Positions 1-46,699 of a stretch of DNA of 64,000 nt are shown here, in pieces. The DNA comes from Lepidodermella squamata. Taxonomy: Eukaryota > Animalia > Gastrotricha. The translations under genes and the position numbers were made by a program. The notes below the pieces were generated by a model. The model had not been told where the DNA came from. It saw only the letters and a program-made list of their open reading frames with translations, and did no database searches. The stretch spans positions 868,001 through 932,000 of the forward strand of contig JBLDXI010000011.1 in the NCBI GenBank assembly GCA_047495785.1, in the 5' to 3' direction. Positions within the stretch are counted from its first letter, which is position 1. Every line of letters begins with the position of its first letter.

Positions 1-701
1 AGACATCGGTAAATTCCCACCCGCTGTAATAATAAAACAAGCCACAACTTCTCATGCAGGGCTCATTCCAACTCTGCACTGGTACATCCACTGGTGGCTC
101 TGGTATCAGTGGAGTAGCCCTCAAGGTGTGCATTTCAACCGCTGTTGCTTGCACAAGCGCCTTCGGTAGCGGCATTACTGTATGTTTCTAAATAAATGCC
201 AATTCAATTGTCTTATTCAACTTGATGTAGCAACAAACCACAACCCCAAATGCCTACGACACGTTCTCTGCATGCTGCAATGCTGCTTCCAGCAATACAG
301 CAGCGAACCTGAAATACGAATACATCCCGGCTCTAGGAACCGGAAATCCAGCGTTAATATGCTACGTCATGACGTCTGACACGCTGCCATACAAAATCGC
401 CACTCCAGCGTCGCCGGCTAACACGAAAAAAGGTTACTGCACTCGCTTCCCATACACATCTTCCGGCACGGACGCACTTGCCTCGAGCGCTGATTTGGTT
501 TGTTAACGCGAAATTGTAACGTGCTTGTATAAATGGGACTTTTTTCAGAAACTCGCTTCCTCCCCGTTCGCTTACGCCAGTTTTACCTTGTGTTGCACCA
601 GCGTGTTTGGTGGCACCCCGGCAGGTACCAACGCATGGGGCCCGGCTGTTTCTGCCTATGGTCTTAGCTTTGAATCATGTGCCACAACATCACCGACATA
701 A
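1..701 (+). CDS. Secreted Cys/Thr-rich protein, copy 0 (5' end outside window): exons <1-8, 60-179, 231-497, 549-701
   Basis: Identical to copy A at offset -2514. Confidence 0.85.
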
Positions 702-1431
702 AAATGGCGACAGCTCAAACACCCTTGTTTTGCTGGCTTTGAACAACCTGCAAGAAGAACTGTTAATTTTGTTCATAATTCCTTGGCAAAAAAAAAACAG
801 TAAGTCTGAGCCAACAAAATGAGAGTTTATTGCTTGATCGTTGCAATGGTTTTCTACATCTGATTACTGTTTCCATTCACGTTGATGGCATTCAAGAGTT
901 GAATAAAAATTATAATCGGAAAATATATGATTCTTTGTACACAAAGATATTCTGCCGGTGCCTAAATTTGTAATTATCCGGCTTTGACTAAGGTACCGTT
1001 TGGCCCCAACTCGCTGGCTACGCCACTACCAACTCGCGCAGTAGTTCAAACATTAACATTCGGTAAAAATAAGATTCCCTTTTGGGATTCCTAGAATTTT
1101 CGATTCTATCTTTCTTGTCATAGAACGCGTGCATAACTCTTATTTACATCTCCAATTCACTTGGAACACGTGCCATAATTTGTGCGCATGAATTCCCATT
1201 GACATTTCTGATTCCTGATATTCATCAACACATAGCAAAAGGAAACCTGTATACAACCCAGGTTAGTCTTTACTATATCTGTCAATTCACAGATTTCAAA
1301 CCCTATTCGGCAACATCAATAATGACAAAAATGGCGAGATGTAGTTACCGCTCGGTAACAAATACGTTAAAGTGTTAGCTTCTGCTTCTCAGGAATGTCT
1401 TAGCTGGACGGTAAAAAGTTGAACTGATGAG

Positions 1432-1788
1432 TTGTCAAATGTTATTACTCGATCTGAAATCCAACAGCATGCTGATGATATTACCACTTATTTTGCAAGC
1501 CAGATCATCAATGAGCTTAAATCTGTCGTACAACGTGAAATGAATAGGGTTTGTCATTGGCTTCAATGCAACTCGCTAGCTGTGAACGGGAAAAACATCG
1601 CAATTTATACCGCTCAACACATCGCTAAACCCACCGCGTTTAATTTCTCGATTACAATCAACGGCACTGTTGTTCCGTCCACCGAAATCATGTCGACTCT
1701 CGGCTTCACCATCGACAATAAACTTACGCTCAAACAACCTATCAAAGGCGCGGAAAGGCCTGTTCGCGCTAAACAAGCAGTAAAATAG
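1432..1788 (+). pseudogene. Decayed non-LTR retrotransposon RT fragment (also at 3946-4299 and 9878-10231)
   Basis: QHADD (YADD-like), WLQCNSLAVN and LGFTIDNKLT motifs typical of the LINE RT C-terminal part; truncated. Confidence 0.8.
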
Positions 1789-2336
1789 CTATTTTGATGG
1801 CTAGCGGCCTGATCTTCAGCCATGTCAGTTACTGACTCAATGACCCGACTTTAGGACAGGCAACACGGACAACGTTGCATCGGCTCCGATCAACTCAAGA
1901 TCGCTCCGAGACTATGAAGTTTGAACTGTGCTGCAGTTATGTGTTTTCTTTCAATTTTCAACTACGTCGGGGTGCCCTCTCTTGGTTGTTGTAGCTCCTA
2001 AACAAATGAAAAAAATATCAGATAGTCCCTTATGCCATGACGGCTACGTAATATGGACTTTTCTTTTCAAGGATTTTGAACAAGAGAAGTAACGAACGTC
2101 CAAAAGACGTTTTCCATTCAGTTGAATGCAACGTCTTCAAAGTAATGTTAGAGTTAAGTGGGTTAGACTCTACTTGACAAGGTGGTCAAGTATGTCCGAT
2201 CATAGGAGAAGCCTTGCTCGATTGGTGAAACCTTATCGGACAGCGTATAGATTCGAGGTCTGCGGCGACTGGAGAATTCAAAAAAAGGCCGGCATTCGAG
2301 ATTTATCTTATTAGTTCCCATTTTTTTTATCTCAAC

Positions 2337-3215
2337 ATGGCCGTTCTCTTTGCGTTGCTTGCCGCCGCCGCCCTGTTTACCAGTTGTTTAGGCTGTCCAG
2401 CATCAACAACTACAACGCCTTGTCCGACTACTGCATCCGGATCAACAACATGCTCTTCTGGTAGCACTTGTGTTTCGTCAAGCAATGTTTGCAGTGACAC
2501 CACAAAAACATGCCAGACATCGGTAAATTCCCACCCGCTGTAATAATAAAACAAGCCACAACTTCTCATGCAGGGCTCATTCCAACTCTGCACTGGTACA
2601 TCCACTGGTGGCTCTGGTATCAGTGGAGTAGCCCTCAAGGTGTGCATTTCAACCGCTGTTGCTTGCACAAGCGCCTTCGGTAGCGGCATTACTGTATGTT
2701 TCTAAATAAATGCCAATTCAATTGTCTTATTCAACTTGATGTAGCAACAAACCACAACCCCAAATGCCTACGACACGTTCTCTGCATGCTGCAATGCTGC
2801 TTCCAGCAATACAGCAGCGAACCTGAAATACGAATACATCCCGGCTCTAGGAACCGGAAATCCAGCGTTAATATGCTACGTCATGACGTCTGACACGCTG
2901 CCATACAAAATCGCCACTCCAGCGTCGCCGGCTAACACGAAAAAAGGTTACTGCACTCGCTTCCCATACACATCTTCCGGCACGGACGCACTTGCCTCGA
3001 GCGCTGATTTGGTTTGTTAACGCGAAATTGTAACGTGCTTGTATAAATGGGACTTTTTTCAGAAACTCGCTTCCTCCCCGTTCGCTTACGCCAGTTTTAC
3101 CTTGTGTTGCACCAGCGTGTTTGGTGGCACCCCGGCAGGTACCAACGCATGGGGCCCGGCTGTTTCTGCCTATGGTCTTAGCTTTGAATCATGTGCCACA
3201 ACATCACCGACATAA
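2337..3215 (+). CDS. Secreted Cys/Thr/Ser-rich protein, 241 aa, copy A: exons 2337-2522, 2574-2693, 2745-3011, 3063-3215
   Basis: Hydrophobic signal peptide MAVLFALLAAAALFTSCLG. Three GT..AG introns give one open frame ending ...SFESCATTSPT*. Paralog differences are mostly synonymous in this frame. 16 Cys after the signal peptide. Confidence 0.9.
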
Positions 3216-4852
3216 AAATGGCGACAGCTCAAACACCCTTGTTTTGCTGGCTTTGAACAACCTGCAAGAAGAACTGTTAATTTTGTTCATAATTCCTTGG
3301 CAAAAAAAAAACAGTAAGTCTGAGCCAACAAAATGAGAGTTTATTGCTTGATCGTTGCAATGGTTTTCTACATCTGATTACTGTTTCCATTCACGTTGAT
3401 GGCATTCAAGAGTTGAATAAAAATTATAATCGGAAAATATATGATTCTTTGTACACAAAGATATTCTGCCGGTGCCTAAATTTGTAATTATCCGGCTTTG
3501 ACTAAGGTACCGTTTGGCCCCAACTCGCTGGCTACGCCACTACCAACTCGCGCAGTAGTTCAAACATTAACATTCGGTAAAAATAAGATTCCCTTTTGGG
3601 ATTCCTAGAATTTTCGATTCTATCTTTCTTGTCATAGAACGCGTGCATAACTCTTATTTACATCTCCAATTCACTTGGAACACGTGCCATAATTTGTGCG
3701 CATGAATTCCCATTGACATTTCTGATTCCTGATATTCATCAACACATAGCAAAAGGAAACCTGTATACAACCCAGGTTAGTCTTTACTATATCTGTCAAT
3801 TCACAGATTTCAAACCCTATTCGGCAACATCAATAATGACAAAAATGGCGAGATGTAGTTACCGCTCGGTAACAAATACGTTAAAGTGTTAGCTTCTGCT
3901 TCTCAGGAATGTCTTAGCTGGACGGTAAAAAGTTGAACTGATGAGTTGTCAAATGTTATTACTCGATCTGAAATCCAACAGCATGCTGATGATATTACCA
4001 CTTATTTTGCAAGCCAGATCATCAATGAGCTTAAATCTGTCGTACAACGTGAAATGAATAGGGTTTGTCATTGGCTTCAATGCAACTCGCTAGCTGTGAA
4101 CGGGAAAAACATCGCAATTTATACCGCTCAACACATCGCTAAACCCACCGCGTTTAATTTCTCGATTACAATCAACGGCACTGTTGTTCCGTCCACCGAA
4201 ATCATGTCGACTCTCGGCTTCACCATCGACAATAAACTTACGCTCAAACAACCTATCAAAGGCGCGGAAAGGCCCCTGTTCGCGCTAAACAAGCAGTAAA
4301 ATAGCTATTTTGATGGCTAGCGGCCTGATCTTCAGCCATGTCAGTTACTGACTCAATGACCCGACTTTAGGACAGGCAACACGGACAACGTTGCATCGGC
4401 TCCGATCAACTCAAGATCGCTCCGAGACTATGAAGTTTGAACTGTGCTGCAGTTATGTGTTTTCTTTCAATTTTCAACTACGTCGGGGTGCCCTCTCTTG
4501 GTTGTTGTAGCTCCTAAACAAATGAAAAAAATATCAGATAGTCCCTTATGCCATGACGGCTACGTAATATGGACTTTTCTTTTCAAGGATTTTGAACAAG
4601 AGAAGTAACGAACGTCCAAAAGACGTTTTCCATTCAGTTGAATGCAACGTCTTCAAAGTAATGTTAGAGTTAAGTGGGTTAGACTCTACTTGACAAGGTG
4701 GTCAAGTATGTCCGATCATAGGAGAAGCCTTGCTCGATTGGTGAAACCTTATCGGACAGCGTATAGATTCGAGGTCTGCGGCGACTGGAGAATTCAAAAA
4801 AAGGCCGGCATTCGAGATTTATCTTATTAGTTCCCATTTTTTTTATCTCAAC

Positions 4853-5731
4853 ATGGCCGTTCTCTTTGCGTTGCTTGCCGCCGCCGCCCTGTTTACCAGT
4901 TGTTTAGGCTGTCCAGCATCAACAACTACAACGCCTTGTCCGACTACTGCATCCGGATCAACAACATGCTCTTCTGGTAGCACTTGTGTTTCGTCAAGCA
5001 ATGTTTGCAGTGACACCACAAAAACATGCCAGACATCGGTAAATTCCCACCCGCTGTAATAATAAAACAAGCCACAACTTCTCATGCAGGGCTCATTCCA
5101 ACTCTGCACTGGTACATCCACTGGTGGCTCTGGTATCAGTGGAGTAGCCCTCAAGGTGTGCATTTCAACCGCTGTTGCTTGCACAAGCGCCTTCGGTAGC
5201 GGCATTACTGTATGTTTCTAAATAAATGCCAATTCAATTGTCTTATTCAACTTGATGTAGCAACAAACCACAACCCCAAATGCCTACGACACGTTCTCTG
5301 CATGCTGCAATGCTGCTTCCAGCAATACAGCAGCGAACCTGAAATACGAATACATCCCGGCTCTAGGAACCGGAAATCCAGCGTTAATATGCTACGTCAT
5401 GACGTCTGACACGCTGCCATACAAAATCGCCACTCCAGCGTCGCCGGCTAACACGAAAAAAGGTTACTGCACTCGCTTCCCATACACATCTTCCGGCACG
5501 GACGCACTTGCCTCGAGCGCTGATTTGGTTTGTTAACGCGAAATTGTAACGTGCTTGTATAAATGGGACTTTTTTCAGAAACTCGCTTCCTCCCCGTTCG
5601 CTTACGCCAGTTTTACCTTGTGTTGCACCAGCGTGTTTGGTGGCACCCCGGCAGGTACCAACGCATGGGGCCCGGCTGTTTCTGCCTATGGTCTTAGCTT
5701 TGAATCATGTGCCACAACATCACCGACATAA
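4853..5731 (+). CDS. Secreted Cys/Thr-rich protein, copy B (4 exons)
   Basis: Identical to copy A at offset +2516. Confidence 0.9.
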
Positions 5732-6440
5732 AAATGGCGACAGCTCAAACACCCTTGTTTTGCTGGCTTTGAACAACCTGCAAGAAGAACTGTTAATTTT
5801 GTTCATAATTCCTTGGCAAAAAAAACAGTAAGTCTGAGCCAACAAAATGAGAGTTTATTGCTTGATCGTTGCAATGGTTTTCTACATCTGATTACTGTTT
5901 CCATTCACGTTGATGGCATTCAAGAGTTGAATAAAAATTATAATCGGAAAATATATGATTCTTTGTACACAAAGATATTCTGCCGGTGCCTAAATTTGTA
6001 ATTATCCGGCTTTGACTAAGGTACCGTTTGGCCCCAACTCGCTGGCTACGCCACTACCAACTCCATTGTAGTCCGGCTTTGCAGGGTCAAAGTCCATTTT
6101 ATTCATCACGTGTGTTTTTATCGTTTATATAATGTGCCACTGGTGGTGCGGTCGTGAGGTGGCGAGGTGGTATTTTTTTGTACTCTTGCCTCACTGTTGT
6201 CAAATGATTTACGCCATTTATGCACAATAATAATCGCGCCTTGCCGTATGTGTACCATAAAAGTCCGCCCCACATTCATACTGACCTGAGCTATCGCAAA
6301 TGATAATGGGCTTTTATAATCAAAACAACGCAAGTCGCGTCTTATAATTACCCCTGATGTGACACAAAAAGCAGTTGCGACGACAGGAATACGATATATA
6401 TGATATAAAATGGGTAAACTGTGTGTTTTCGTTTTGTAAA

Positions 6441-8411
6441 ATGCCCGCTGCTTACAGTTTTGAGGTGAGCGTTGACTTGGACTCGATAAAGCACCGTTTG
6501 GAGCGGATGCCAGCTTCGATTACTGATGTGCAGATTCGTACTCGTAGAGCGCGAGCTGAATTGGCGCAGACTCTTGCTTTGAAGACGCTACCTTCTACAT
6601 GGCCATTTTCGCAGATAATGAATGGGGCCATTATAAAATCGGCCAAATTAACCATCGAGTATGATGACATTGGGGTTGTGGAAATCGAAGTACCCAGCGA
6701 AAAGCCAGCTAAATCTAGGGAAAGCGCAAACAATCGTGCTAAAAGGTTATAGAAATTGTCAAGTTATCGAATTTTATTAAATATTTTTTACTCTAGTCTC
6801 GTGATTCTGGGATTGCGTTACGGAATTAACGCCAGCAAGTTGCTAGCAATGCGTCGTTCCATTGGTTTCGAGTCAGTGTCAAAAGATTTATTCTATAAAG
6901 TTAGGAACGAGCTGGCTGTTTTGCACCCTATAAGCACGATAAGCGACGGAAAGGCGGCTTTCCGATCGGTATTTTCGCTTGCCAGTACTTGGGCCCGTAA
7001 AGGTGAGTTGAAACCGTCGGTCACTAACGACATTCGACTCCAGGTATAAATAAATTAAAATTCGAGGTAGAATTGAAACTTTATGAGTAACTGTTTAAGG
7101 TGGATGGGATGGCGAGCCGGACGAATTACGCTGACCCCCTTGTCACCGCCTATGTCTGTGTGGCGAGCAGGAAAAGGAAAGCCGGGATCGATAATGAAGA
7201 CCAATTGGCTGTCTATAATGATAACGAGTCAGCGGGTAATTTTCGAGAATATTTACAACCCCCTGTCGACGAGCTTGTAAAACTGGTCGAGCAAGGCATA
7301 ACAGTCGACGGAAAAAGCTACAGTTTCAGACTGCTGACCTGCTGTGATTACCCGGCGCTGGTAAAAATATTTGGCTGTGGTCATCAGTCGAGTGAAAATC
7401 GTTGTGTTATTTGCGAGATGAGCGTCCGAAACCCAACTTTGCCAGCTAAAAGACGCAAGTTCGATGAATATTCGGCCGAAATGGCTGGGAAGCTGGGGTG
7501 GTCGGAAGATTTCGGGCCTATGATTCGGCAAAGCGAGGACAAATTGCTGATAATACCGGACTTCTTCCATCTTCAAGTCAATATTGCGAAACCACTGATT
7601 ACCCAGGTTAGCATAGCAAGCGGAAAACTCTTCGAAAAGACATTTCATCCGAAAAATAACTTTAGGTTCTCGGAAAGTTGAGAGCGTTCAGTCAACGCGA
7701 AGCAATCAAAAAAGTCATCGAATTCTTGAAGATTGGGTCGAAATACAAATCATCAGCGGCTTCTTCAAGACGGATCAAGCGAACTCCGAAAAACTCGAAG
7801 CTGTCTATTGACGTCCGCCGAACTTTGAAGGGGAAAGTCAAAGTCAGCATTAAAAATTCGAATCACTACGGCGTTGTTCAGGTAGAATTGTGGTAGAGTG
7901 AAAATAAAACTTAATTTTGGATTTAAAATTTCAGGCATTTAAGCGATTTACTGAACATATGAGCCAAAATTCGTTGACTGATGCGTTTTTCTTGCCAAAA
8001 AATTGGCAGAGAAAGAAAGTTTTCCGAAAAGTGAAGTCATCTGCCCGAATCAAAGAAAACGACTTTCTTACTTCTTTAGCCGGTCTTCGGAAGCTTTGCA
8101 TCGCATCATGTGCCGCGTTTGACGATATCAAGGAAAATCGGAAAAAAGGAAAGGGCAAGTTCTTTATGCCGCGTTATGCATCGCTCTGGAAGACGCATGT
8201 TGGTCCTGTCACGTCATACGCACATCTCCTTTCGAGCCACACATACGAGCTGTTGAAACGAAATATTAATCTGGCCGCTTTGTCCGCTGAAAGCATCGAA
8301 CTACTCATCAAAGAGCTGCGCGCAACAGTTAGCAGTCAAACTTCTAATTTCTGGCCGTTGTCTTCTCAGCTCATGAGAATTCAGAACATGAAAGACAATC
8401 TGAAAATTTGA
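6441..8411 (+). CDS. RAG1/Transib-like DDE transposase, ~583 aa: exons 6441-6745, 6797-7043, 7100-7606, 7666-7881, 7935-8411
   Basis: Spliced frame is open. Motifs VDGM, CDY..L....G.......CxxC, PDFFH and TSYAHLLSSH..E...R.....A...ESIE...K..R resemble the RAG1/Transib catalytic and Zn-binding motifs. Confidence 0.85.
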
Positions 8412-8545
8412 TACTTCAATTTTGTCAGCTTTACTTCTCATTTCAAGTTTTAATTTTTAAAAGTAAAATTCGAAAATGTAGAAAGAATGTTTTTTATTCA
8501 GCCTCTACTCTTGAACTCATCATCATCAGATAGCACGGCAAAATT

Positions 8546-9276
8546 TCATCTTTTCGTGTACACATACTCATCTCGAGCTCGATCGAAATGCAATTCATAT
8601 TTATCTTGTGCGGACCAGACGAAAGAAAAAAGCCCGGCTCGGCAGAGCTCATCGAGTTTCGAAATTTGCCGGCAGATTGCGTTTTGGCTTCTGCCAAGTT
8701 CAGCATCAAGGTTTTTATCGGACAGAGTAATCCGCATCCAGAATTTTAATAAGCTTTTGGGAGCAGTCGCCAATTTACCGCGTTTCGTGTAGAAGGCGAA
8801 CACATGTCGCAATCGATTCCGGTCGCTAAAGGTCCACTCAACGCGTGAATTCGCGGCGTGAACTATATAAATTCGGACTATTTAGGACTCTCAGTGTCAA
8901 GCATTTCCAGATACTAACCTTTGTCAAACCGCTTTGACACCGCCCTGATGTAGTTCCAAGAGCCATAACTTGCCGTAGAAACCGAAGAGTCGAGCGTTGT
9001 ATCGCTGATTTCGATGGGCTCGATTTGCTCGGCTTGATGCGCGCCTGCTTGTTCCTGCTGTCCAAATTCCTCATGAAGAAACGATTCATCGCCTTCATTT
9101 TCCGATAAACCGGTTTCAGACTGCTGATTATTTTTCGATTTGGCGAACATTGATCGAATATCGGCCTGTTTTTCAAAGCGATTGTGCTGTTGTTGCTGAT
9201 GATGAGCAGCTCTGCGCTCACTCCTGCGCTGCCTTTTTCGCCGATTGCGTGATCGCGATTTCGCAGTTTCACTCAT
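8546..9276 (-). CDS. Convergent accessory gene of the RAG1-like element, ~224 aa: exons 9276-8919, 8862-8546
   Basis: A 56-nt GT..AG intron joins two ORF-track frames. Arg-rich NLS-like N-terminus, acidic/Gln linker, probable helical C-domain; no family recognised. Confidence 0.7.
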
Positions 9277-10784
9277 TTTATTCAGATGAATTTCGCAAAT
9301 AGCTCGAAAAACGAATGGCTTTACGACTGATAAAAATAACAAGTGAACGACTGCACGACCTCACCACTGCACCACCAGCGCGCATATAGCTAAACATAAG
9401 ACTACTACACACATGATATATAGCAATAATAATTGCACATGAATCATCTAGGTCACTCTGCAAAACCCGGACTTGTATGTCGCGCAGTAGTTCAAACATT
9501 AACATTCGGTAAAAATAAGATTCCCTTTTGGGATTCCTAGAATTTTCGATTCTATCTTTCTTGTCATAGAACGCGTGCATAACTCTTATTTACATCTCCA
9601 ATTCACTTGGAACACGTGCCATAATTTGTGCGCATGAATTCCCATTGACATTTCTGATTCCTGATATTCATCAACACATAGCAAAAGGAAACCTGTATAC
9701 AACCCAGGTTAGTCTTTACTATATCTGTCAATTCACAGATTTCAAACCCTATTCGGCAACATCAATAATGACAAAAATGGCGAGATGTAGTTACCGCTCG
9801 GTAACAAATACGTTAAAGTGTTAGCTTCTGCTTCTCAGGAATGTCTTAGCTGGACGGTAAAAAGTTGAACTGATGAGTTGTCAAATGTTATTACTCGATC
9901 TGAAATCCAACAGCATGCTGATGATATTACCACTTATTTTGCAAGCCAGATCATCAATGAGCTTAAATCTGTCGTACAACGTGAAATGAATAGGGTTTGT
10001 CATTGGCTTCAATGCAACTCGCTAGCTGTGAACGGGAAAAACATCGCAATTTATACCGCTCAACACATCGCTAAACCCACCGCGTTTAATTTCTCGATTA
10101 CAATCAACGGCACTGTTGTTCCGTCCACCGAAATCATGTCGACTCTCGGCTTCACCATCGACAATAAACTTACGCTCAAACAACCTATCAAAGGCGCGGA
10201 AAGGCCCCTGTTCGCGCTAAACAAGCAGTAAAATAGCTATTTTGATGGCTAGCGGCCTGATCTTCAGCCATGTCAGTTACTGACTCAATGACCCGACTTT
10301 AGGACAGGCAACACGGACAACGTTGCATCGGCTCCGATCAACTCAAGATCGCTCCGAGACTATGAAGTTTGAACTGTGCTGCAGTTATGTGTTTTCTTTC
10401 AATTTTCAACTACGTCGGGGTGCCCTCTCTTGGTTGTTGTAGCTCCTAAACAAATGAAAAAAATATCAGATAGTCCCTTATGCCATGACGGCTACGTAAT
10501 ATGGACTTTTCTTTTCAAGGATTTTGAACAAGAGAAGTAACGAACGTCCAAAAGACGTTTTCCATTCAGTTGAATGCAACGTCTTCAAAGTAATGTTAGA
10601 GTTAAGTGGGTTAGACTCTACTTGACAAGGTGGTCAAGTATGTCCGATCATAGGAGAAGCCTTGCTCGATTGGTGAAACCTTATCGGACAGCGTATAGAT
10701 TCGAGGTCTGCGGCGACTGGAGAATTCAAAAAAAGGCCGGCATTCGAGATTTATCTTATTAGTTCCCATTTTTTTTATCTCAAC

Positions 10785-11663
10785 ATGGCCGTTCTCTTTG
10801 CGTTGCTTGCCGCCGCCGCCCTGTTTACCAGTTGTTTAGGCTGTCCAGCATCAACAACTACAACGCCTTGTCCGACTACTGCATCCGGATCAACAACATG
10901 CTCTTCTGGTAGCACTTGTGTTTCGTCAAGCAATGTTTGCAGTGACACCACAAAAACATGCCAGACATCGGTAAATTCCCACCCGCTGTAATAATAAAAC
11001 AAGCCACAACTTCTCATGCAGGGCTCATTCCAACTCTGCACTGGTACATCCACTGGTGGCTCTGGTATCAGTGGAGTAGCCCTCAAGGTGTGCATTTCAA
11101 CCGCTGTTGCTTGCACAAGCGCCTTCGGTAGCGGCATTACTGTATGTTTCTAAATAAATGCCAATTCAATTGTCTTATTCAACTTGATGTAGCAACAAAC
11201 CACAACCCCAAATGCCTACGACACGTTCTCTGCATGCTGCAATGCTGCTTCCAGCAATACAGCAGCGAACCTTAAATACGAATACATCCCGGCTCTAGGA
11301 ACCGGAAATCCAGCGTTAATATGCTACGTCATGACGTCTGACACGCTGCCATACAAAATCGCCACTCCAGCGTCGCCGGCTAACACGAAAAAAGGTTACT
11401 GCACTCGCTTCCCATACACATCTTCCGGCACGGACGCACTTGCCTCGAGCGCTGATTTGGTTTGTTAACGCGAAATTGTAACGTGCTTGTATAAATGGGA
11501 CTTTTTTCAGAAACTCGCTTCCTCCCCGTTCGCTTACGCCAGTTTTACCTTGTGTTGCACCAGCGTGTTTGGTGGCACCCCGGCAGGTACCAACGCATGG
11601 GGCCCGGCTGTTTCTGCCTATGGTCTTAGCTTTGAATCATGTGCCACAACATCACCGACATAA
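10785..11663 (+). CDS. Secreted Cys/Thr-rich protein, copy C (4 exons)
   Basis: Copy A at offset +8448. A CTG>CTT change (~11273) is synonymous in the spliced model but puts a stop in the overlapping 65-aa ORF. Confidence 0.9.
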
Positions 11664-11942
11664 AAATGGCGACAGCTCAAACACCCTTGTTTTGCTGGCT
11701 TTGAACAACCTGCAAGAAGAACTGTTAATTTTGTTCATAATTCCTTGGCAAAAAAAACAGTAAGTCTGAGCCAACAAAATGAGAGTTTATTGCTTGATCG
11801 TTGCAATGGTTTTCTACATCTGATTACTGTTTCCATTCACGTTGATGGCATTCAAGAGTTGAATAAAAATTATAATCGGAAAATATATGATTCTTTGTAC
11901 ACAAAGATATTCTGCCGGTGCCTAAATTTGTAATTATCCCCT

Positions 11943-12135
11943 TTAATTTTCCCCTTTTTCGCGTACATTGACTTGTCCATCGACTTGGGTCTTCAACAGC
12001 CGCGGGACATTTTCTAAATTTTTTTCGTAATCTTGCATGTCTAATTTAATAACTGCCGTTGAAGCATAAAATGCAACAAATGCAACAAATGCAATGAAAG
12101 CAACTAAAGCAGTTTCCATTACGACCTGGTAATCT
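11943..12135 (-). CDS. Possible terminal exon encoding a transmembrane helix
   Basis: Acceptor-like TTTCAAACAG then ...TALVAFIAFVAFVAFYASTAVI...; upstream exons not identified. Confidence 0.25.
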
Positions 12136-12654
12136 GTTTGAAATAAATTCCGCGTTTTGAAATAAATGGGTAATGTTGCTTTCGCCAATTTGTGTAGCAT
12201 CCGGGGCGCTATCGGCTAACCGTTATATACGCGAATTTCACATACCCGCAAGAATACGTCCAATGGCTAGTACAAACAGTTTTAACTGAATTGGATCAGA
12301 AAATTTGCTATTAAATCGCAGTTAAATGTTTATATTTTTTCCAGATATTAGGTTGACATTGTTGCGCGTTTGATCTTATTGCATGAATATTCAGGGCAAC
12401 TCGTTGTCCTCAAAACTTTAGTAATGTACAGCTTGCAGGTGAAAATCCCGAAGCTAATGCTTTCGTTCCGAAGAATGTTCTTTATCTTGATTAAATAATA
12501 CAAATTTTGGCGGAGCAATAATTGATATTTTTCCAGCAATGAACAACAATAGCTGTACTATCATTCAGTGCTGCGTTTTTTTTGCCTCGTGCACGACTCG
12601 TGAACAGGCGCAATTAAAATGCTATATTTAGGCTCATATTATTTGACGGACACA

Positions 12655-13083
12655 CTGTAGTTACCGAAATATAAGCCTCCCCTCGATTAGAAGCCTGTCT
12701 CGTTTAGAAGCCTAGGTAAATTGGAATTCTTCGATGCATAGTCCTATCTGGAATAGTAGCCTAGGCTATTACGGCATGTGGGCTCTCCCGAGCTTAAAGG
12801 TTATAACAACGAAAAATGCCTGAAGATGTTGGATAATCTGCGACTTTTGCGACGATGATTTTTGTTGTGGCGCTCCTTATTTTCAGCTATTAGGCGACCT
12901 GGGTAATAGCTAGTAACGAAGAATTTGATGAGTTTTGAGACTGAAACACGCTAAATTACGCCACGTCTTCGTTGCATAAGCCTATCTCAAAAAGAAGCCT
13001 AGTCTTGAATAGTAGCCTACTTTTCCCCATTTTTCGAGTTATCATTTTTGCATAAGCCCGGGTTAGTATTTCGGTAACTACGG
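12655..13083. mobile_element. Tc1/mariner-pogo-type MITE
   Basis: TIR C(T/C)GTAGTTACCGAAATA ... TATTTCGGTAACTACGG followed by TA; internal AGAAGCCT subrepeats. Confidence 0.7.
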
Positions 13084-14699
13084 TAGTCCCTTATGCCATG
13101 ACGGCTACGTAATATGTACTTTTCGTTTCAAGGATTTTGAACAAGAGAAGTAACGACCGTCCAAAAGACGTTTTCCATTCAGTTGGATTGAATGCTGCTG
13201 CTAGAGTCAGTGTCCTCCTCTGAAGTGAAAATGTCCACTGTGCTAGCAAATTTTGTTTTGAATTTATTTAGGAGGGCATTAAACATCGATGACATTTCAA
13301 AAACCGACTGCTCTAGAAACTAACAAAGTTCCGTTGAAAAAGCAAGACAAGCGAGCAATCTTCGAAAGCAAAGTCGAATGTGTAAGCTTTGAACGTACAT
13401 GATGACCATTTAGAAGCTCTGAGCTCCATTCTTTCCTGTCTTGGGAGCCGTCTAGGGCGAGATGCGCCTATTGGGGATGAAAATAGCATTAATGAGCCTA
13501 GCTAGAGAATATATGAATGAGTTTAGAGCTTCGAAATGGTTATTATTGGAACCTACCAACCTGCTTTGGAGTCTGTTCGACCTTCGCGTACGAGTCGACT
13601 TACAGCGGAGTCAGTGGACTTGGTGCCCTGGAAAGACCCGCGAAAACTACGTTTCTTGAAAATTTCAAAAATTCTACACGCTTATGTCATTCAAATAATT
13701 CCGGCTATCGAAGGCATATCGAAGTGTGTGCAATCTCAATGGTGGCTGAGAAACAAATTCATCTCTTGATAATGATTTCATAGTACCCGTGAAAACAACC
13801 CATGTTTTTAGGGGACCAGGGGACTACGACGACGAGATATATGATACTGGAATATGGTGATAGTGAATATGGATGGGTAGTGGGCAGTAAACTGGATAGT
13901 GACGAGTGATAATCTCGCCGATGTGGTCCCCTAAACCCGCAAGTGAAAGGCCGGCATACCGCGGAGGCTATAAAACTGTTCATTTGGTAATTCGGTCATT
14001 GCAACTGCTTTGAAAAGGTTAGGCAGTGTGTTTTCGAATGGACAAACAATTTGAACAGTATGGTGGAACAGTATAGGCTGTTCCAGGTGAGGCTGGTCAT
14101 CATATCTTAAAATCCGAAAAGAGAGCTAGCAAAAAATTAAGGCCTTGAATGGATAAACCAAATTCGCGAGCTCGTTCGAAGCAGTCATTGCGGCCTAAAA
14201 ATTAACCGTAATAAACTAATATTGTGATTTATCTGCCTAAGATTAGATGAGGAACTCTTTGGCATATGGAACTTGGAATAGAAGAAATATAGATATTCAA
14301 AAATCTCAAAAACTTGAAATCAGATACTATTTTACAAAGAAAGAATCGAAGTTCATCAAAGGATCCAGCTTTGTGAGCTAATTTGTGAGCTTACTTCTGG
14401 CATAAGCAAAATCCCGAATTCATATCAAATAGCAATATTTATAAAGGATAACTGCTATTGATGGGGTTGAGGGTGTAAAAATTATATCCCTAACCCAGTG
14501 TTTGTTTTTAAGGAAAAGTTCAGTGTTTACCCAAAACATAGTTCGGTGTTTACCCCTTTTCGCCTTATAATTACAGGAATTTTTCGGTATAAAATTGCGG
14601 GAAATGTATATCGAAAACAGCATTGCCGAAAACGTCAGACATCATCACAAGGCTCATGAGTCAAATATACACATGGTTGATGGTCGAACCAGGGTCCCC

Positions 14700-24398: not shown

Positions 24399-27203
24399 TT
24401 ACATTGCTTGAGGGTTGTGAGGCAAACAGTCAACAATGAGGTGCATGTGATCGTTGGAGTGAGGAATAATTGGAAATGATCTTTTTACATGTAATTCCTT
24501 CCATGAAACTATAGAAATTTTTTTCATGTCACCGGTTACATGATAAGAGAAGTAGCGGCGGAAGAAGCGCTCGATGGTCAGTTCAACAACAACGAAAAAA
24601 ACGTCATCATCAATAGAGTAAATGCACTCAATTTGGTGAAAAGTAGGTCGATTGGGACTATTAAACCAGCCGACACTCGGCTTCGAAGTAGTAATAGCCG
24701 AGCCGATTACAAAAAAAGCTCCTTTATAGCGAATCGAATTACGCACGACAGCTCTTTCAGGTAGACTCAAAGCAGAAACGTCAAGGTAGCTCAAATATTC
24801 GGTTAGATTTTTCTCTTTTCCTCCATCAATCAATTTCAGCGAATCAGTCGAATTCAAGAATCTTTTCGATTGATATTTTGCACAGTTAAAAATTTGAGAA
24901 ACAGGATTATGGTAATTTTTTGGTTCAATTTTACAGAGACCTCGCTCGAAGCCAAGAGACGAGTAGAATCGCGCAGGTCCGTATTCACGCATTTGCTGCG
25001 GATAATGAACAAGGTTGTGAAGCTTTGTTACAACAAACGACTCGCCATAAGTTTCAACGGACAGTTGCAAGAATCGAAAGATCAAGTTTTCAAGGATAGG
25101 TACATCATCAAGAAACACAAAAGGCGAATAAATGAAAGATAAAATCTTGTTTAAAATCTGAAGCACATGGTATTCCTTCGAATCAAAAAACATTGGTTTC
25201 TGTTTCAGACAAGTAAAATCTAGAATAAATCCTAGCCGGGTCATTAGAATTCGCATTTGCGTCGCCGTCTGATGACAGTGAATTTCGCCGGACGTCACCG
25301 TGAAATTTGGTGCCGGAATCGCCTCATGTTTGGCTGTGTCGTCGAAGTCGAATTGCTCGATTGCGCTGTTCATCGCGTCATCCGTCAGCCCGAAGCTGGT
25401 CTTGGCCTTGGTAAGGGCTCCGTTCAAAACGTAGACGCAGACACCCTCCAGTAGGTCATGGGCTGGCTCACTGACTACGCACGCTGGGAATCGCGGGCCC
25501 AGGTGCGGTGACTCGGCCAAGATAGAGAGTACGCCGCTCAACCCAGTTTCGGTCATCCTGATTAGAGGAAAATAAAAAAATTTAAGGAGGACGATTTTTC
25601 AACAATTTTCAACAATTTTTTCACATAATAAATGGAAAAAATTTAATTAAATTAAATAAAATGAAACAATAAGGAAAAATTGATATAAGCTAATTTTTAC
25701 TTTCAATCAGCAAATAATTCTAATTTTTTTTTAATTTTGGAATAATTGACAATTTTTCTTTCAATTTGGAGGAAATTTATCTATATTCTAAAATAGAGCT
25801 GTGTCGGTTTCAATTCTAGATTCCCGGTCCGGTTCTGTTCAACGATTCTGGAGGACCGGACCGAGTTAGCCGGGAGAACCGGCGGTTGACCATAATAACT
25901 GAAGTGTGCGAAAATTTGATGAAAATACTTACAACGCCCTCATCTCCGTAACATTCGGCGCATCTGAAATCCTTCGCGATTGAACAACCATAGTTTCCGC
26001 GTTTCGTAGTTTCAGGTTCGTAGCTTCGAAAACGAGGCCGAATTGCCCGCGCGGTGTTTCACATTTCGAACACGTGAGATGAGCCCGAAAACTTTCGAGC
26101 ATGCCGATGATTTGATGCTGAGCCAAGTTATCGCCGAGAAAACTCACGACGATAATTCTAACTTCTTTGCCTTGAACGATGATGGTGGTTTCGAGATCTT
26201 TCTCAACCGCCTTGATGACTGAATTCAGGGCTGAGTAACAACAGGACTTGTATGACACGATTAGCTAATTCGGAAAAAAATTACCTGCTGTTTTTCTCGT
26301 TTCCTTAGGTAGCTCGCAGCTCTTCGAAGCGGCGAGTAGAAAATGGAATTCAGGGCTGAAAAATAGGGAAATTAGAAAAAAATTAAAAAAAATCGAAGGG
26401 TAGTCTCACATTTGTTCGAACATTCTGGCGATCATCTTCCATTCGAAAACGGCCAATTTTTGCTTCTTCACGTAAGTTCCAAGAGCGGAAACCGATACGA
26501 ACTCGTCAAAGAAGAGAAAAAGTGGGACAATAAAATCCTCATTAATATCGATGATAATTTCTCGAACTGCCGAGCCATCAAGAGGTGATGTTAAAAAGCC
26601 GTCGGATTCTTGTTGCAATAAACTCGTTTTGCTGAAAATTTGCAGTAAATCCGGTTTCGAGTTTAGAAAGTGGCTGATTTGTTTAGAAATCGGTAGGTAC
26701 TGGAAGGTTTCGACGGCCTCAGGTTGACAAGGCGCCAAGAATGATAGAAATTTTCCGCGGTTGTGAGTCGAGAGCATATTTTTGAAAATGTTATCGAATG
26801 GAAGAGACCAAAATCCACCGATGTAGTGTTCCAGCAATTTTCGAACGCATTGGGCGAGGAAATCGACAACAAAACAAACAAGAGTTTCAGTCGCCATGAA
26901 ATCGAATTTCAACTTGAAAATAAACTCGAGAAGCGATGAATTCAAATTCTCAGTCAAAATATCTTCAATATCGAGCTTATGACGGACAGGCTCATCTTCC
27001 ATTTGCGTGGCATCATCAATCCCATCAACAACAGGCGCATGCGTTAAGATCGGCTGTTGGTCACATTTTCCGACTGGCGCACTTTCGTTCGAACGAGGCA
27101 AGCAAACGTGTTGGTTGAACATGTGTTGAGAGGTGAATGTAGCCTTGCAGTCACATATCCATTCAGCTTTTTTAACTCTTGTAAACGAAAATGAAGAAGC
27201 CAT
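24399..27203 (-). CDS. EnSpm-type transposase, ~773 aa: exons 27203-26410, 26355-26285, 26230-25933, 25557-24399
   Basis: Open spliced frame. N-terminal CxC..H..C finger; LFFDEF..ALG..KQKL, GDNLAQH..G..ESF....CSKC, HDLLEG and KLHNLVHY......GP......FE motifs. Confidence 0.88.
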
Positions 27204-44085: not shown

Positions 44086-46699
44086 GCCGTATGCATGAGT
44101 ACTGCCCGATCACTACAGTACTAAGCAGTACGGTCAGGCGTGCCGTACTGGGGTGTACAGCTAATTTCAGCTGTACAGCGAGTACAGCGCGCCGACTGTA
44201 CTTTATTTTACAGTCGGTTTGAGCAGTACTGCTGTTTTACAGAGCCATGGACTGTACATTTCGGTACTGCTGAACAAAAAAAATAAGCAAAGTGCTGGTT
44301 CTTCCGCGACACGAACGAGATGTTACTGGTAAGACTGATAGGCCGGTAATTTTTAGCTTCCAGCCGAGATCCGCTTTTCTTGTAGATAGGAATAACATCT
44401 GCCACCTTCCAAACGTCAGGTAGCTGACCTGAGAGCATAGAAGAGTTGAAGATGATAGAAAGAGGTACAGAGAGAGAAGTAGCGAGATTTTTAAGTAAAA
44501 ATTGAGGCAGATTGTCAGAGCCACCGCCCAATTTTGGCTTCAAGTTGGAGAGATACAGAGATACAGTATATTCGTCGAACTGAATGTGTTGTAGGCAGTC
44601 ATTTGTAATCTTGTTATTATAACTGGCCCCCTCCGTAGATAAAGGCCTAAAATTCGCAGAGAAAGTGTCGGCAAAAAGCTCAGCCTTGTCTAAATCGCTA
44701 ACGACAATTTTTTCTTTCGATTTCATCGCTGAGGGCACAGACGATTTGTTTTCTTTCAAGAAATTTGATACGAATTCAAAGATTTTTTTCGCTGAACCAT
44801 TTTCCAGAAGATCGTTTTCCCTTTGATACTGAAATTTTAGCATTTCTTTTTTGAAAGAACTTTCCGCCGCTTTGAACTTGTTTCGCGCATCGGCATCATT
44901 TAGCTTGTTTTTCAGATATTTGCGATACGCTCGCTTCCTTTTATTTTCTAACGAGCTCGCTTTATTTTTGGATTTGCGGCGCCTTCTGGAATTCAGTTTT
45001 AAATTCCTGCGCGGAGAAAATTGAATAATTCCTCTATACATGATATCCAAAAACGCTGAGTAATTTTCGTCTACGCTAGTAGATTTCAGAATTTCCTGCC
45101 AGTCATACATTTGAAGATATTCTGAAAAAGCAAAGAAGTTAGTGTTTCTGATATCAAAAACGCCATTGATGTCGTTTGAGACGGAGGGCGGTTTGTTTAC
45201 AATGTTTAGATTTATAATCATTGTATCGTGATCGGTTTTAGGTAAGGGTGTGAGTACGGTGATATTTTCTACAATGTCGCGAGATTTAGTTATGACCAGA
45301 TCAAGAATGTTTTTCCCAGCGCGAGTAGGTTTTTCTACATTTTGAACAAGATTAGTGTGAGTATTTACAACACCGAGAAGATAGTCAAAGAGGTGTTTAG
45401 TTGCCAAGTCTGAAGCGTACATCGAGCGATAGCAATAGGTTAGTTCTCGGCGCCTCACCTCAGAGGTCGTTGGAGACCACTTTCAGGAATTTTTTGGGGG
45501 GTGTTTTATTCCCGATACCCCCAACCCCCCACCCTGACCGCGCCCTGATTTCAACCAAAAAACGTGCGAAGCGAGGAAATATTTAATATTTTTTACTAAA
45601 AACCGCTCTGAAACCTGTTAAAATTGACTAAACAGAAGGCGAAAGTTAAGTTTCAAGCTGAAAGTGTTAAAAAAGCATGTTCTATAGCACTGAAAACGTT
45701 GATAATAAGTTTTTACATGTTTTTGCCTTCCGACCCATGCGACCCGCAGTCTTCCTAGCGACCCATCAGAAAATCCTCTGCGACCCTATTTTGGGTCGCG
45801 AACCCCCTCATGAGAACCGCTTTAACTCAATCTCAATGTAGATCCATGTCATTGCACAACATCACCAGTGATATAGTACGGATGCTAAGGAACATACTTT
45901 GATCTCAAGTTAGATTTCACTCAGATAACAAGCAGTGTACGCCGAGAAAGGGTCTATGTATCTATGAATGGAGGTAACTTTACTTACCTTAATCTCAACT
46001 TAGATGTATGTCATTGCACAACATTAACATTAAGATGCACAATACTCATACTCATATTCATTTTTATTGCAAATTATTTTTCGTCAGTTAGAAAATAGTC
46101 AAGTTTAGTTTAGCAGAAAGTTGTTTCTTGGCGCCTCACCGCAGAAGTCACGCAGTTTTCCAATGAAGCCGAATTAATTTTTAGATATTCACTGAAAGCC
46201 CTGTGAGAGTTGTTAACCACGCAAGACAGCAGACGGTTCCACGCAGCACGCACGCGCCTGGAACAGCTGAATTTATACTAATTAGCGATAGGATCTTAAG
46301 CCCTCACATCCTCTTTGCATTGAGATGGAGATTAGAGATGTCTTAATCCTGTTCAATCTTGACTCCCTGATATTATAGATGTTACGATCGACTCATGTCA
46401 ACTTTATCTTCCCCGGAAAGACACTATACTGAGATGCATATAATCTTTAGAATGTTAGAATCATCTGTAGCAAAAGATCTATATTGTGATTTAGATACCC
46501 AATACCCACCTATCGTTCAAATGCATGTGAAATGGAAAATTGGGAACGTGAGTAATATTCATCAGTCGCCTCACAATCGCTTCAATGACAAGGCCTTGAA
46601 AAAAGCCCGTTTGCTTCGAAAAAGAAATGAAAAATGTCATCAAATTATTTTAGGAATAATCAAAAATAACAATGAACTCAAATTCTCATTCTCAAATTA

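What the first reader, a model, noticed from the sequence alone, without database searches (positions are those of the whole stretch)
6064..9479. RAG1/Transib-like transposon with a ProtoRAG-style convergent second gene but a 2-bp TSD and CAT ends
The spliced transposase has RAG1-type motifs with matching spacing, compared from memory: VDGM vs CDGM; D..L....G.......CxxC; DFFH vs DALH; TSYAHLLSSHTYELLKRNINLAALSAESIE vs [30 protein letters not shown]. Established: Transib and ProtoRAG have CAC termini and 5-bp TSDs, and ProtoRAG carries RAG2L tail-to-tail with RAG1L. Here the empty sites in sister repeat units fix the TSD at 2 bp (TC), the ends are CAT..ATG, the TIRs are imperfect (CATTGTAGTCCGG-CTTTGCAG vs CATACAAGTCCGGGTTTTGCAG), and the convergent partner shows no kelch or PHD features. 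Both frames are intact and the insertion post-dates a near-identical tandem duplication, so it is probably recent. Possibly an uncharacterised lineage of the Transib/RAG/CMC clan.
Basis: partly seen in the sequence, partly recalled or inferred. Interest (0 to 1): 0.8.

Follow-up and report, generated by a model that had tools for sequence, protein, structure and literature searches.

The report
Two-gene RAG1-fold CMC-type DNA transposon
This is a real, young and apparently intact 3.4-kb cut-and-paste transposon whose enzyme has the RAG1/Transib fold, but by sequence, ends and 2-bp duplication it belongs with the CACTA-Mirage-Chapaev relatives, as a rare undescribed family with its own conserved helper gene rather than a RAG ancestor.

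Summary
A 3416-bp element (6064-9479) interrupts one unit of a 100%-identical 2.5-kb tandem repeat. Two empty sister units prove a 2-bp TSD (TC). The ends are CAT..ATG with imperfect ~21-nt TIRs. Two intact convergent genes encode a 583-aa transposase (5 exons) and a 224-aa partner (2 exons).

A family homologue folds like RAG1 (Z 11.4), BbRAGL (8.8) and HzTransib (7.7). Its model matches plant CACTA, Chapaev-type and RAG1 clusters equally well (TM 0.60-0.71), so the fold marks the whole CACTA-Mirage-Chapaev-Transib (CMCT) clade. Detectable sequence similarity goes only to CMC proteins:
- Pfam Transposase_21, E 2e-4, below the curated cut-off.
- hhalign to a Mirage/EnSpm-like group, 96.6%, E 5e-10.
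- No RAG1 or Transib hit, even at E 10.

CMCT lineages with 2-bp TSDs are already described (Mirage, ESTA, CNEST).

New here:
- The convergent partner is conserved in four members that are ~40% identical. It has no kelch or PHD domain, and its fold is unresolved.
- TIRs and subterminal motifs are conserved between members.
- Other copies are mostly flanked by TA.
- The partner's intron is spliced out in one contig of a run guessed to be RNA.
- The family is very rare: about 10 fragments among 1.8 billion proteins.

This scan had already reported sister copies on other DNA of this genome, with the same verdict.

The parts
6062..6063 (.). Left copy of the 2-bp target-site duplication (TC)
   Evidence: Empty sites in sister repeat units carry a single TC. 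An X1 contig joins 6061 to 9480.
6064..6084 (+). Left terminal inverted repeat, CATTGTAGTCCGGCTTTGCAG
   Evidence: The same consensus (CATTRTA..YCGGYTTTGC) is found at both ends of the diverged relative L006 and at the left ends of L007 and L008. An X1 contig starts exactly at 6064.
6107..6112 (.). CACGTG box about 40 nt inside the left end
   Evidence: Also present, twice, at the matching place in L006 and L007. Its function is unknown: a host bHLH site or an element-protein site.
6140..6171 (+). Left subterminal GGTGG-rich repeat, inverted partner of 9347-9378
   Evidence: 32 nt, 78% complementary. A similar CCACC-rich run lies at the right end of L010.
6441..6745 (+). Transposase exon 1 (aa 1-102, N-terminal domain)
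   Evidence: Gene model. Conserved in L001, L002 and L006.
6797..7043 (+). Transposase exon 2 (aa 102-184). On the homologue model this region aligns to RAG1 from residue 467, the dimerisation/DNA-binding and pre-RNase H region by RAG1 domain names recalled from memory.
   Evidence: VIA-align places the homologue on RAG1 residues 467 onward.
7100..7606 (+). Transposase exon 3 (aa 185-353). RNase H core with D186 (7103-7105), D267 (7346-7348), C286/C289 (7403-7414) and D338FFH341.
   Evidence: Pfam Transposase_21 at E 2e-4. Fold match to RAG1/Transib obtained through the homologue.
7666..7881 (+). Transposase exon 4 (aa 354-425), a weakly conserved insertion region
7935..8411 (+). Transposase exon 5 (aa 426-583 plus stop). 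H522x4H527 (from 8223) and E544/E547 (8289-8300).
   Evidence: Conserved in L001, L006 and L010.
8919..9276 (-). Partner gene exon 1 (aa 1-119). Basic NLS-like stretch followed by an acidic, Gln-rich region.
8546..8862 (-). Partner gene exon 2 (aa 120-224 plus stop), the conserved about 100-aa domain
   Evidence: Convergent homologues in L001, L006 and L010. Intron 8863-8918 is spliced out in an X2 contig.
9347..9378 (-). Right subterminal CCACC-rich repeat
9458..9479 (-). Right terminal inverted repeat (reverse complement CATACAAGTCCGGGTTTTGCAG)
   Evidence: Other copies carry the perfect form ..GGACTACAATG.
9480..9481 (.). Right copy of the TSD (TC)

Best explanation
This is an autonomous, recently inserted cut-and-paste DNA transposon of the CMCT clade (CACTA/EnSpm, Mirage, Chapaev, Transib). 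It belongs to a rare, apparently undescribed family that sits on the CMC side by sequence.

Shown:
- A 583-aa DDE transposase with residues D186, D267 and E547 (or E544).
- A C286xxC289 plus H522x4H527 motif in the positions of RAG1's zinc ligands. Zinc binding itself was not tested.
- The RAG1-type pre-RNase H, RNase H and ZnC2 architecture, confirmed on a homologue.
- A precisely defined 2-bp TSD.
- A partner gene in the same convergent position in four diverged members.

Inferred:
- The transposase recognises the conserved CATTRTA..CGGYTTTGC ends and cuts the target with a 2-nt stagger. TA looks preferred; this copy used TC.
- The 224-aa partner has a basic N-terminus, an acidic middle and a conserved ~100-aa C-terminal domain. 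It would act as an obligatory helper that binds subterminal repeats (GGTGG/CCACC runs, CACGTG box) and/or recruits or imports the transposase.
- That role is functionally analogous to En/Spm TnpA or the Harbinger Myb-like protein, not to RAG2.
For: Insertion, TSD and TIRs.

Gene models. The partner intron is spliced out in an X2 contig.

Family conservation over the full length, about 40% identity, with all motifs kept.

Fold, from the AF2 model of homologue P0011:26-289 (pLDDT 68.9):
- The top 48 Foldseek PDB hits are all HzTransib, RAG1 or BbRAGL.
- VIA-align gives Z 11.4 to RAG1, against 5.6 for the first unrelated chain.

CMC affinity:
- Pfam Transposase_21 is the only consistent family, E 2e-4.
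- An exhaustive phmmer search reaches the CMC-like protein P0007 at E 2e-4 and no RAG1 or Transib.
- The P0007 group hits Transposase_21 and DUF1258, which is Mirage according to PMC3985635.
- hhalign of the family profile against that group gives 96.6% probability, E 5.2e-10, over 170 columns.

Partner gene convergent in the window, L001, L006 and L010.

Multi-copy and young: an X1 contig differs at 11 of 2660 positions and starts at the TIR, and other flanks are seen.

Flanks next to the termini are TA in 5 of 10 cases.

The literature describes the CMCT clade as sharing CA..TG termini, 2-5-bp TSDs and the C(2)C and H(3-4)H motifs (PMC12730594).
Against: - No Pfam CMC model reaches its curated cut-off (20.9 bits against 28.6).
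- No phylogeny with Repbase references could be made, so the position within the CMCT clade is not resolved.
- For the C-terminal exon, language-model features put RAG1_ZnH2 as the nearest named cluster (0.92, weak).
- The folded protein was a 40%-identical homologue piece, not this copy's spliced protein.
- Transposase mRNA was not seen. X2 covers only the partner gene and the ends.
- The partner's fold and DNA binding are unproven: AF2 pLDDT 52.7, no Foldseek or Pfam hit.
- One relative, L006, is flanked by ATG on both sides. This could be a 3-bp TSD in that lineage, or chance.
Confidence: 0.78

Rival explanations
1. The family is a true member or sister of the Transib/RAG1 lineage, and its partner is a functional analogue of RAG2. 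That would make it an independent ProtoRAG-like two-component system.
For: - RAG1 is the best solved-structure match, Z 11.4.
- The spacings D267 to CxxC (+19 and +22), H(4)H, and H527 to E547 (+20) equal those of mouse RAG1 D708/C727/C730/H937/H942/E962. The RAG1 residue numbers are from established knowledge, recalled from memory.
- The C-terminal exon's nearest named atlas cluster is RAG1_ZnH2.
- The two genes are arranged tail to tail.
Against: - No sequence or profile hit to RAG1, BbRAGL or Transib, even at E 10, and none in 1.8 billion proteins. CMC proteins are hit.
- The same D to CxxC spacing occurs in the CMC group.
- The fold matches CACTA and Chapaev clusters equally well. No CMC structure exists in the PDB, so RAG1 ranking first there is expected.
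- The TSD is 2 bp, not 5, and the ends are CAT, not CAC.
- The partner is 224 aa with no kelch or PHD domain.
Confidence: 0.08
2. It is simply a member of an already described 2-bp-TSD CMCT lineage (Mirage, ESTA or the CNEST clade), so it is not a new family.
For: - Mirage makes 2-bp TSDs (recalled from memory; not checked in a paper here).
- ESTA and CNEST make TA TSDs. ESTA was linked to RAG1 by HHpred (PMC12730594). The CNEST clade includes unclassified animal transposases (bioRxiv 10.1101/2025.05.19.654958).
- TA flanks dominate here.
- There are weak DUF1280 (Chapaev) hits and a structural hit to a DUF1280 cluster at TM 0.70.
Against: - The exhaustive phmmer search found only about 7 relatives, all unannotated metagenome fragments, and no annotated Mirage, Chapaev or CNEST-type protein at E below 1e-3 apart from the P0007 fragment.
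- All Pfam CMC hits are below the curated cut-offs.
- CNEST ends begin with CACGG and that element is 7.2 kb.
- Repbase sequences could not be compared here.
Confidence: 0.2
3. The second gene is not a transposition helper. It could be a passenger, a regulator such as a repressor, or a captured host gene.
For: - No recognisable domain and no homologues outside the family.
- In X2 the partner is covered but the transposase is not. This would suit an independently expressed regulator.
Against: - It keeps the same position and orientation, with 28-48% identity, in four members whose transposases are only about 40% identical. That argues for long co-inheritance under selection with the element.
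Confidence: 0.15

Closest known systems
CMC supergroup (CACTA/EnSpm, Mirage, Chapaev; Yuan and Wessler 2011, as cited in PMC12730594)
   Same: - Profile-level sequence homology: hhalign 96.6% to a Transposase_21/DUF1258-type group.
- D(Y/S)PA motif at the second Asp, followed by C(2)C at +19 and +22, a D..H..N motif, H(4)H, then E.
- CA..TG termini and a short TSD. The 2-bp length equals Mirage (Mirage TSD recalled from memory).
- An extra element-encoded protein and subterminal repeats recall En/Spm TnpA (from established knowledge, not checked here).
   Different: - Below the curated Pfam cut-offs for Transposase_21, DUF1258 and DUF1280.
- Ends are CATTRTA, not CACTA or CACNG.
- The transposase is small, 583 aa.
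- The partner is a separate convergent gene with no known domain.
- TA is favoured as target.
ESTA and CNEST (CMCT/CMC lineages with TA TSDs; PMC12730594; bioRxiv 10.1101/2025.05.19.654958)
   Same: - 2-bp TSD with TA preference.
- RAG1-like by remote-homology tools but EnSpm-like by sequence.
- The CNEST clade contains animal sequences.
   Different: - ESTA is described from rust fungi, some families with TET/JBP genes.
- CNEST is 7.2 kb, with 33-bp TIRs that start with CACGG, and encodes a ~4.4-kb transposase gene.
- No sequence-level hit to such proteins was found.
Transib / RAG1 / ProtoRAG
   Same: - Pre-RNase H, RNase H and ZnC2 fold: Z 11.4 to RAG1, 8.8 to BbRAGL, 7.1-7.7 to HzTransib.
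- Identical spacing of the acidic residues and of the Cys/His residues that occupy the positions of RAG1's zinc ligands.
- Tail-to-tail second gene, as in ProtoRAG.
   Different: - No sequence-detectable similarity.
- 2-bp TSD, not 5 bp.
- CAT ends, not CAC.
- No kelch or PHD partner.
- The fold is equally close to CACTA and Chapaev clusters.
PIF/Harbinger two-gene transposons (functional analogy only)
   Same: - A transposase plus a separate small, putatively DNA-binding helper gene within one element (recalled from memory).
   Different: - An unrelated transposase family, with 3-bp TSDs (both recalled from memory).
- A Myb-like fold for this partner is only a lead (atlas score 0.87) and could not be confirmed.

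Membership tests
Transib/RAG1 (including ProtoRAG) | RNase H-fold DDE core with the ZnC2/ZnH2 architecture | tested here: met
   The model of homologue P0011 matches RAG1 at Z 11.4 over 243 aa, BbRAGL at 8.8 and HzTransib at 7.7. Motifs are at D186, D267, C286/C289, H522/H527 and E547. This feature is shared with CMC, so it does not discriminate.
Transib/RAG1 (including ProtoRAG) | Sequence or profile similarity to RAG1 or Transib transposases | tested here: not met
   No Pfam RAG1 hit at E up to 1. No RAG1, RAGL or Transib chain at E up to 10 with single sequences or three family profiles. None in the exhaustive phmmer search.
Transib/RAG1 (including ProtoRAG) | 5-bp TSD | tested here: not met
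   A 2-bp TSD is fixed by two empty sites.
Transib/RAG1 (including ProtoRAG) | CAC-initiated, heptamer-like termini | tested here: not met
   All termini checked begin with CAT: both ends in the window and L006, and the left ends of L007 and L008.
ProtoRAG | RAG2-like kelch (with or without PHD) partner gene | tested here: not met
   The partner is 224 aa with no Pfam hit. Only the convergent orientation is shared.
CMC (CACTA/EnSpm-Mirage-Chapaev) | Homology to CMC transposases | tested here: met
   hhalign gives 96.6%, E 5.2e-10, over 170 columns against a group that hits Transposase_21 and DUF1258. phmmer reaches P0007 at E 2.1e-4.
CMC (CACTA/EnSpm-Mirage-Chapaev) | Passing a curated Pfam model (Transposase_21, DUF1258 for Mirage, DUF1280 for Chapaev) | tested here: not met
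   Best score is Transposase_21 at 20.9 bits against a cut-off of 28.6. DUF1280 reaches 14 bits against 25. There is no DUF1258 hit.
CMC / CMCT clade | [quoted passage not shown] | tested here: met
   C286xxC289 and H522x4H527 lie between D267 and E547 and are conserved in the family. The definition is taken from PMC12730594.
CMC / CMCT clade | CA..TG termini and 2-5-bp TSDs | tested here: met
   CAT..ATG ends and a 2-bp TSD.
Mirage / ESTA / CNEST (described 2-bp-TSD lineages) | Nesting within the lineage in a transposase phylogeny | not testable with these tools
   No Repbase, ESTA or CNEST sequences could be obtained. The absence of close hits argues against close membership.

The most novel reading that the evidence does not exclude
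The family is a new superfamily-level branch of the CMCT clade, lying between CMC and Transib/RAG1. It would have evolved, independently of RAG2, an obligatory second subunit encoded tail to tail. That would give a natural comparison for how a RAG1-fold transposase comes to depend on a partner protein.
Probability: 0.15. Interest if true: 0.7.

Novelty: new variant of a known kind. Interest (0 to 1): 0.4.

Why it matters
RAG1-fold transposases are of interest because V(D)J recombination came from one of them. This element shows that RAG1-type motif spacing, a RAG1-like fold and even a convergent helper gene also occur on the CMC side of the clade. None of these, alone, marks a RAG ancestor.

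The family itself is a rare, apparently active, compact two-gene system of 3.4 kb with well-defined ends. That makes it a practical subject for testing how a partner protein serves a RAG1-fold transposase. It would also extend the catalogue of CMCT lineages with TA or 2-bp targets.

Tried and rejected
- Direct sequence and profile searches of the PDB for RAG1 or Transib found only chance hits.
- A Rfam scan of the window found nothing.
- Pfam scans of large ORFs elsewhere in the window and in the tandem-repeat unit found nothing, so the host remains unidentified.
- The partner protein could not be characterised. Pfam at E up to 10 gave nothing, a profile search of 5.8 billion proteins found only its own family, the AF2 model was poor (pLDDT 52.7), and Foldseek gave no match. 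The Myb/SANT reading therefore stays a lead.
- The JGI metagenome scan for more copies failed once for lack of a conserved stretch and then found no relatives.
- TIR pattern searches in L001 and L002 found no ends.
- No RNA run holding the transposase was found.
Exons and homologue pieces were used instead.
- A phylogeny with RAG1, Transib, Chapaev, Mirage and EnSpm references was not possible, because no reference sequences were obtainable.
- A Tc1/mariner reading for the TA flanks was rejected, because the fold and motifs are CMCT-type.


Full report
**1. Observation**

The window begins with a tandem repeat of about 2514 bp. Units start at 1, 2515, 5031 and 10963 and are 100% identical over the compared 300-nt blocks. 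The third unit is 3418 bp longer than the others.

The two intact units read CCAAC-TC-GCGCAG at 1034-1035 and 3548-3549. The interrupted unit reads CCAAC-TC, then CATTG...GTATG, then TC-GCGCAG. The insert is therefore 6064-9479 (3416 bp), and the target-site duplication is exactly 2 bp (TC).

A contig from public run X1 also joins 6061 to 9480, skipping 3418 bp.

The two ends are an imperfect inverted repeat of about 21 nt that starts with CAT. No second copy lies in the window.

**2. Genes**

On the plus strand, one combination of GT..AG introns of 51-59 nt gives an open 583-aa frame. The exons are 6441-6745, 6797-7043, 7100-7606, 7666-7881 and 7935-8411.

On the minus strand, a convergent gene has exons 9276-8919 and 8862-8546 and encodes 224 aa. 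A contig of run X2 lacks exactly 8863-8918. X2 is labelled RNA only as a guess, the shorter side of the joint is 27 nt, and the depth is 3.8. It is nevertheless the only transcript-type evidence obtained. X2 does not cover the transposase ORF, and no RNA run holding the transposase was found.

**3. A rare family with a conserved architecture**

An exhaustive phmmer search with exon 3 against 1.84 billion representative proteins returned only seven hits. Profile searches added a few more. All are unannotated ORF fragments on short metagenome or Logan contigs.

Four diverged members carry a convergent homologue of the second gene downstream of the transposase. Their transposases are about 37-43% identical to this one. 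The members are the window, L001, L006 and L010. Intron positions differ between members, so these are separate lineages in intron-bearing hosts.

L006 holds a whole element of 3248 bp. Its ends, CATTATAACTCGGTTTTGC, align with the ends in the window. L007 carries the same left end at a different insertion site, and L008 begins at it.

Subterminal features are also shared:
- A CACGTG box lies 30-45 nt inside the left end of the window element and of L006.
- GGTGG/CCACC runs lie at 6140-6171 and 9347-9378 in the window and at the right end of L010.

**4. What the transposase is**

The motifs sit at D186 (QVDGM), D267 (CCDYPA), C286xxC289, D338FFH341, H522x4H527 and E544/E547. They are conserved across the family.

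The spacings are D267 to Cys +19 and +22, H(4)H, and the last His to Glu +20. These equal those of mouse RAG1 (D708, C727, C730, H937, H942, E962). The RAG1 residue numbers come from established knowledge recalled from memory.

I could not submit the spliced protein, because it has no contiguous reference. I folded the homologue piece P0011:26-289 instead. It is 40% identical to this protein and corresponds to exons 2-3. The model has mean pLDDT 68.9, and the core is well modelled.
- Foldseek against the PDB gave HzTransib, RAG1 and BbRAGL as all of the top 48 hits. The best E-value was 1.8e-4.
- VIA-align gave RAG1 Z 11.4 over 243 aa, BbRAGL 8.8 and HzTransib 7.1-7.7. The first unrelated chain scored 5.6.

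The RAG1/Transib fold is real.

**5. Why this does not make it a RAG1/Transib element**

First, the PDB holds no CMC transposase, so RAG1 ranking first there is expected. Against ESM Atlas models, the same model matches all of these equally well:
- plant CACTA clusters (Transposase_21), TM 0.63-0.68;
- a DUF1280 cluster, TM 0.70;
- RAG1 clusters, TM 0.60-0.71.

Language-model neighbours of exon 3 are likewise a mixture of Transposase_21, RAG1, DUF1280 and Plavaka clusters.

Second, the sequence signal goes only to the CMC side:
- Pfam Transposase_21 is the only recurrent family, at E 2e-4 and below its cut-off.
- phmmer reaches P0007 at E 2e-4.
- P0007 and its relatives hit Transposase_21 and DUF1258. 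Majorek et al. equate DUF1258 with Mirage and DUF1280 with Chapaev (PMC3985635).
- They share the same DxPA...CxxC spacing.
- hhalign of the family profile against that group gives 96.6% probability and E 5.2e-10.

In contrast, three family profiles and two single exons found no RAG1, RAGL or Transib chain in the PDB, even at E 10.

Third, the defining Transib/RAG features tested here fail. The TSD is 2 bp, not 5. The termini are CAT, not CAC. The partner is 224 aa with no kelch or PHD domain.

[quoted passage not shown] Its members share CA..TG termini, 2-5-bp TSDs and the C(2)C and H(3-4)H motifs. ESTA has TA TSDs and was linked to RAG1 by HHpred (PMC12730594). CNEST is a further CMC lineage with TA TSDs (bioRxiv 10.1101/2025.05.19.654958).

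One piece of evidence points the other way. The C-terminal exon's nearest named atlas cluster is RAG1_ZnH2, at 0.92 with low recognition. This is weak.

**6. Target choice and activity**

Loose ends of contigs in runs X1 and X2 show other copies with other flanks. I combined these with L006, L007 and this copy, taking the two bases next to each terminus:
- TA in 5 of 10 flanks: X2 left, L007 left, and three right ends.
- TC on both sides in this copy, which is proven by the empty sites.
- AC once.
- TG and AT in L006.

L006 can also be read as ATG on both sides. That would be a 3-bp repeat, or chance, or a chimeric contig.

I infer a 2-bp TSD with a preference for TA that is not absolute.

An X1 contig of 2660 bp differs from this copy at only 11 positions and starts exactly at the TIR. 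Elements that share only the outer 30-40 nt also exist. Together with the insertion into a still-identical tandem repeat, this indicates a young, multi-copy and probably active family.

**7. The partner**

The partner's N-terminus is strongly basic and looks like a nuclear localisation signal. An acidic, Gln-rich stretch follows. The last ~100 aa form the conserved part, with residues such as W..D..L...F, KFW, LGRS..AI..Q and AGLF.F.

Its nearest language-model neighbour is a Rap1 Myb cluster at 0.87, which the tool rates as a lead only. Pfam found nothing. The profile search found only family members. The AF2 model was poor, with pLDDT 52.7, and Foldseek gave no match.

I propose, by inference, that the partner is a DNA-binding or recruiting helper, analogous to En/Spm TnpA or the Harbinger Myb-like protein. 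Its conserved position in four lineages argues that it belongs to the transposition machinery. A regulator or passenger role is not excluded.

**8. Verdict**

This is a new family, possibly a new lineage, of a known kind: the CMCT clade, on the CMC side by sequence. It is not a special RAG1 relative.

This scan already reported sister copies on other pieces of this genome (s1-365904, s1-421954) and a related three-gene element (s1-379575). Their conclusions were the same, and I reached mine from my own tests.

New points added here:
- the hhalign link to CMC;
- the equal structural match to CACTA, Chapaev-type and RAG1 clusters;
- TIR and subterminal conservation across diverged members;
- the bias of flanks toward TA;
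- the spliced partner contig;
- a fourth member with the convergent partner.

Noticed in passing
window 9474-9479 versus 6064-6069: This copy's right terminus has TGT where other copies in runs X1 and X2 have ACA. Those copies end in ..GGACTACAATG, a perfect TIR. Positions 4-6 of this right end are therefore the reverse complement of the canonical form, which looks like a 3-nt inversion rather than three separate substitutions. Both end types occur in X1.
   Followed up: partly
window 1-5030, 5031-6063 plus 9480-10962, and 10963 to about 13200: The host context is a tandem array of at least four units of about 2.5 kb, 100% identical over the compared blocks. A more diverged partial unit lies around 11750-13188 (82-96% identity). 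ORFs in the unit have no Pfam hit. What the repeat is remains unknown.
   Followed up: partly
window 6107-6112; L006 about 298-303 and 312-317: A CACGTG (E-box-like) motif is conserved 30-55 nt inside the left end in two members whose transposases are only about 40% identical. It could be a host bHLH/USF-type promoter element or a binding site for an element protein.
   Followed up: no
L006 261-263 and 3512-3514: The diverged relative is flanked by ATG on both sides. This could be a 3-bp TSD in that lineage, chance (1 in 64), or a chimeric metagenome contig. L007 has the same element end next to TA.
   Followed up: partly
window 24399-25556, 44208-45458 and other ORFs of 180-416 aa: Ten long ORFs elsewhere in the window have no Pfam family at E 1e-3 or better. 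Rfam finds no RNA family in the whole window.
   Followed up: no
run X1 contigs at window 6095-6096 and 9439: Some contigs share only the outer 30-40 nt of each end and then diverge. This suggests non-autonomous or divergent sister elements that use the same termini.
   Followed up: no
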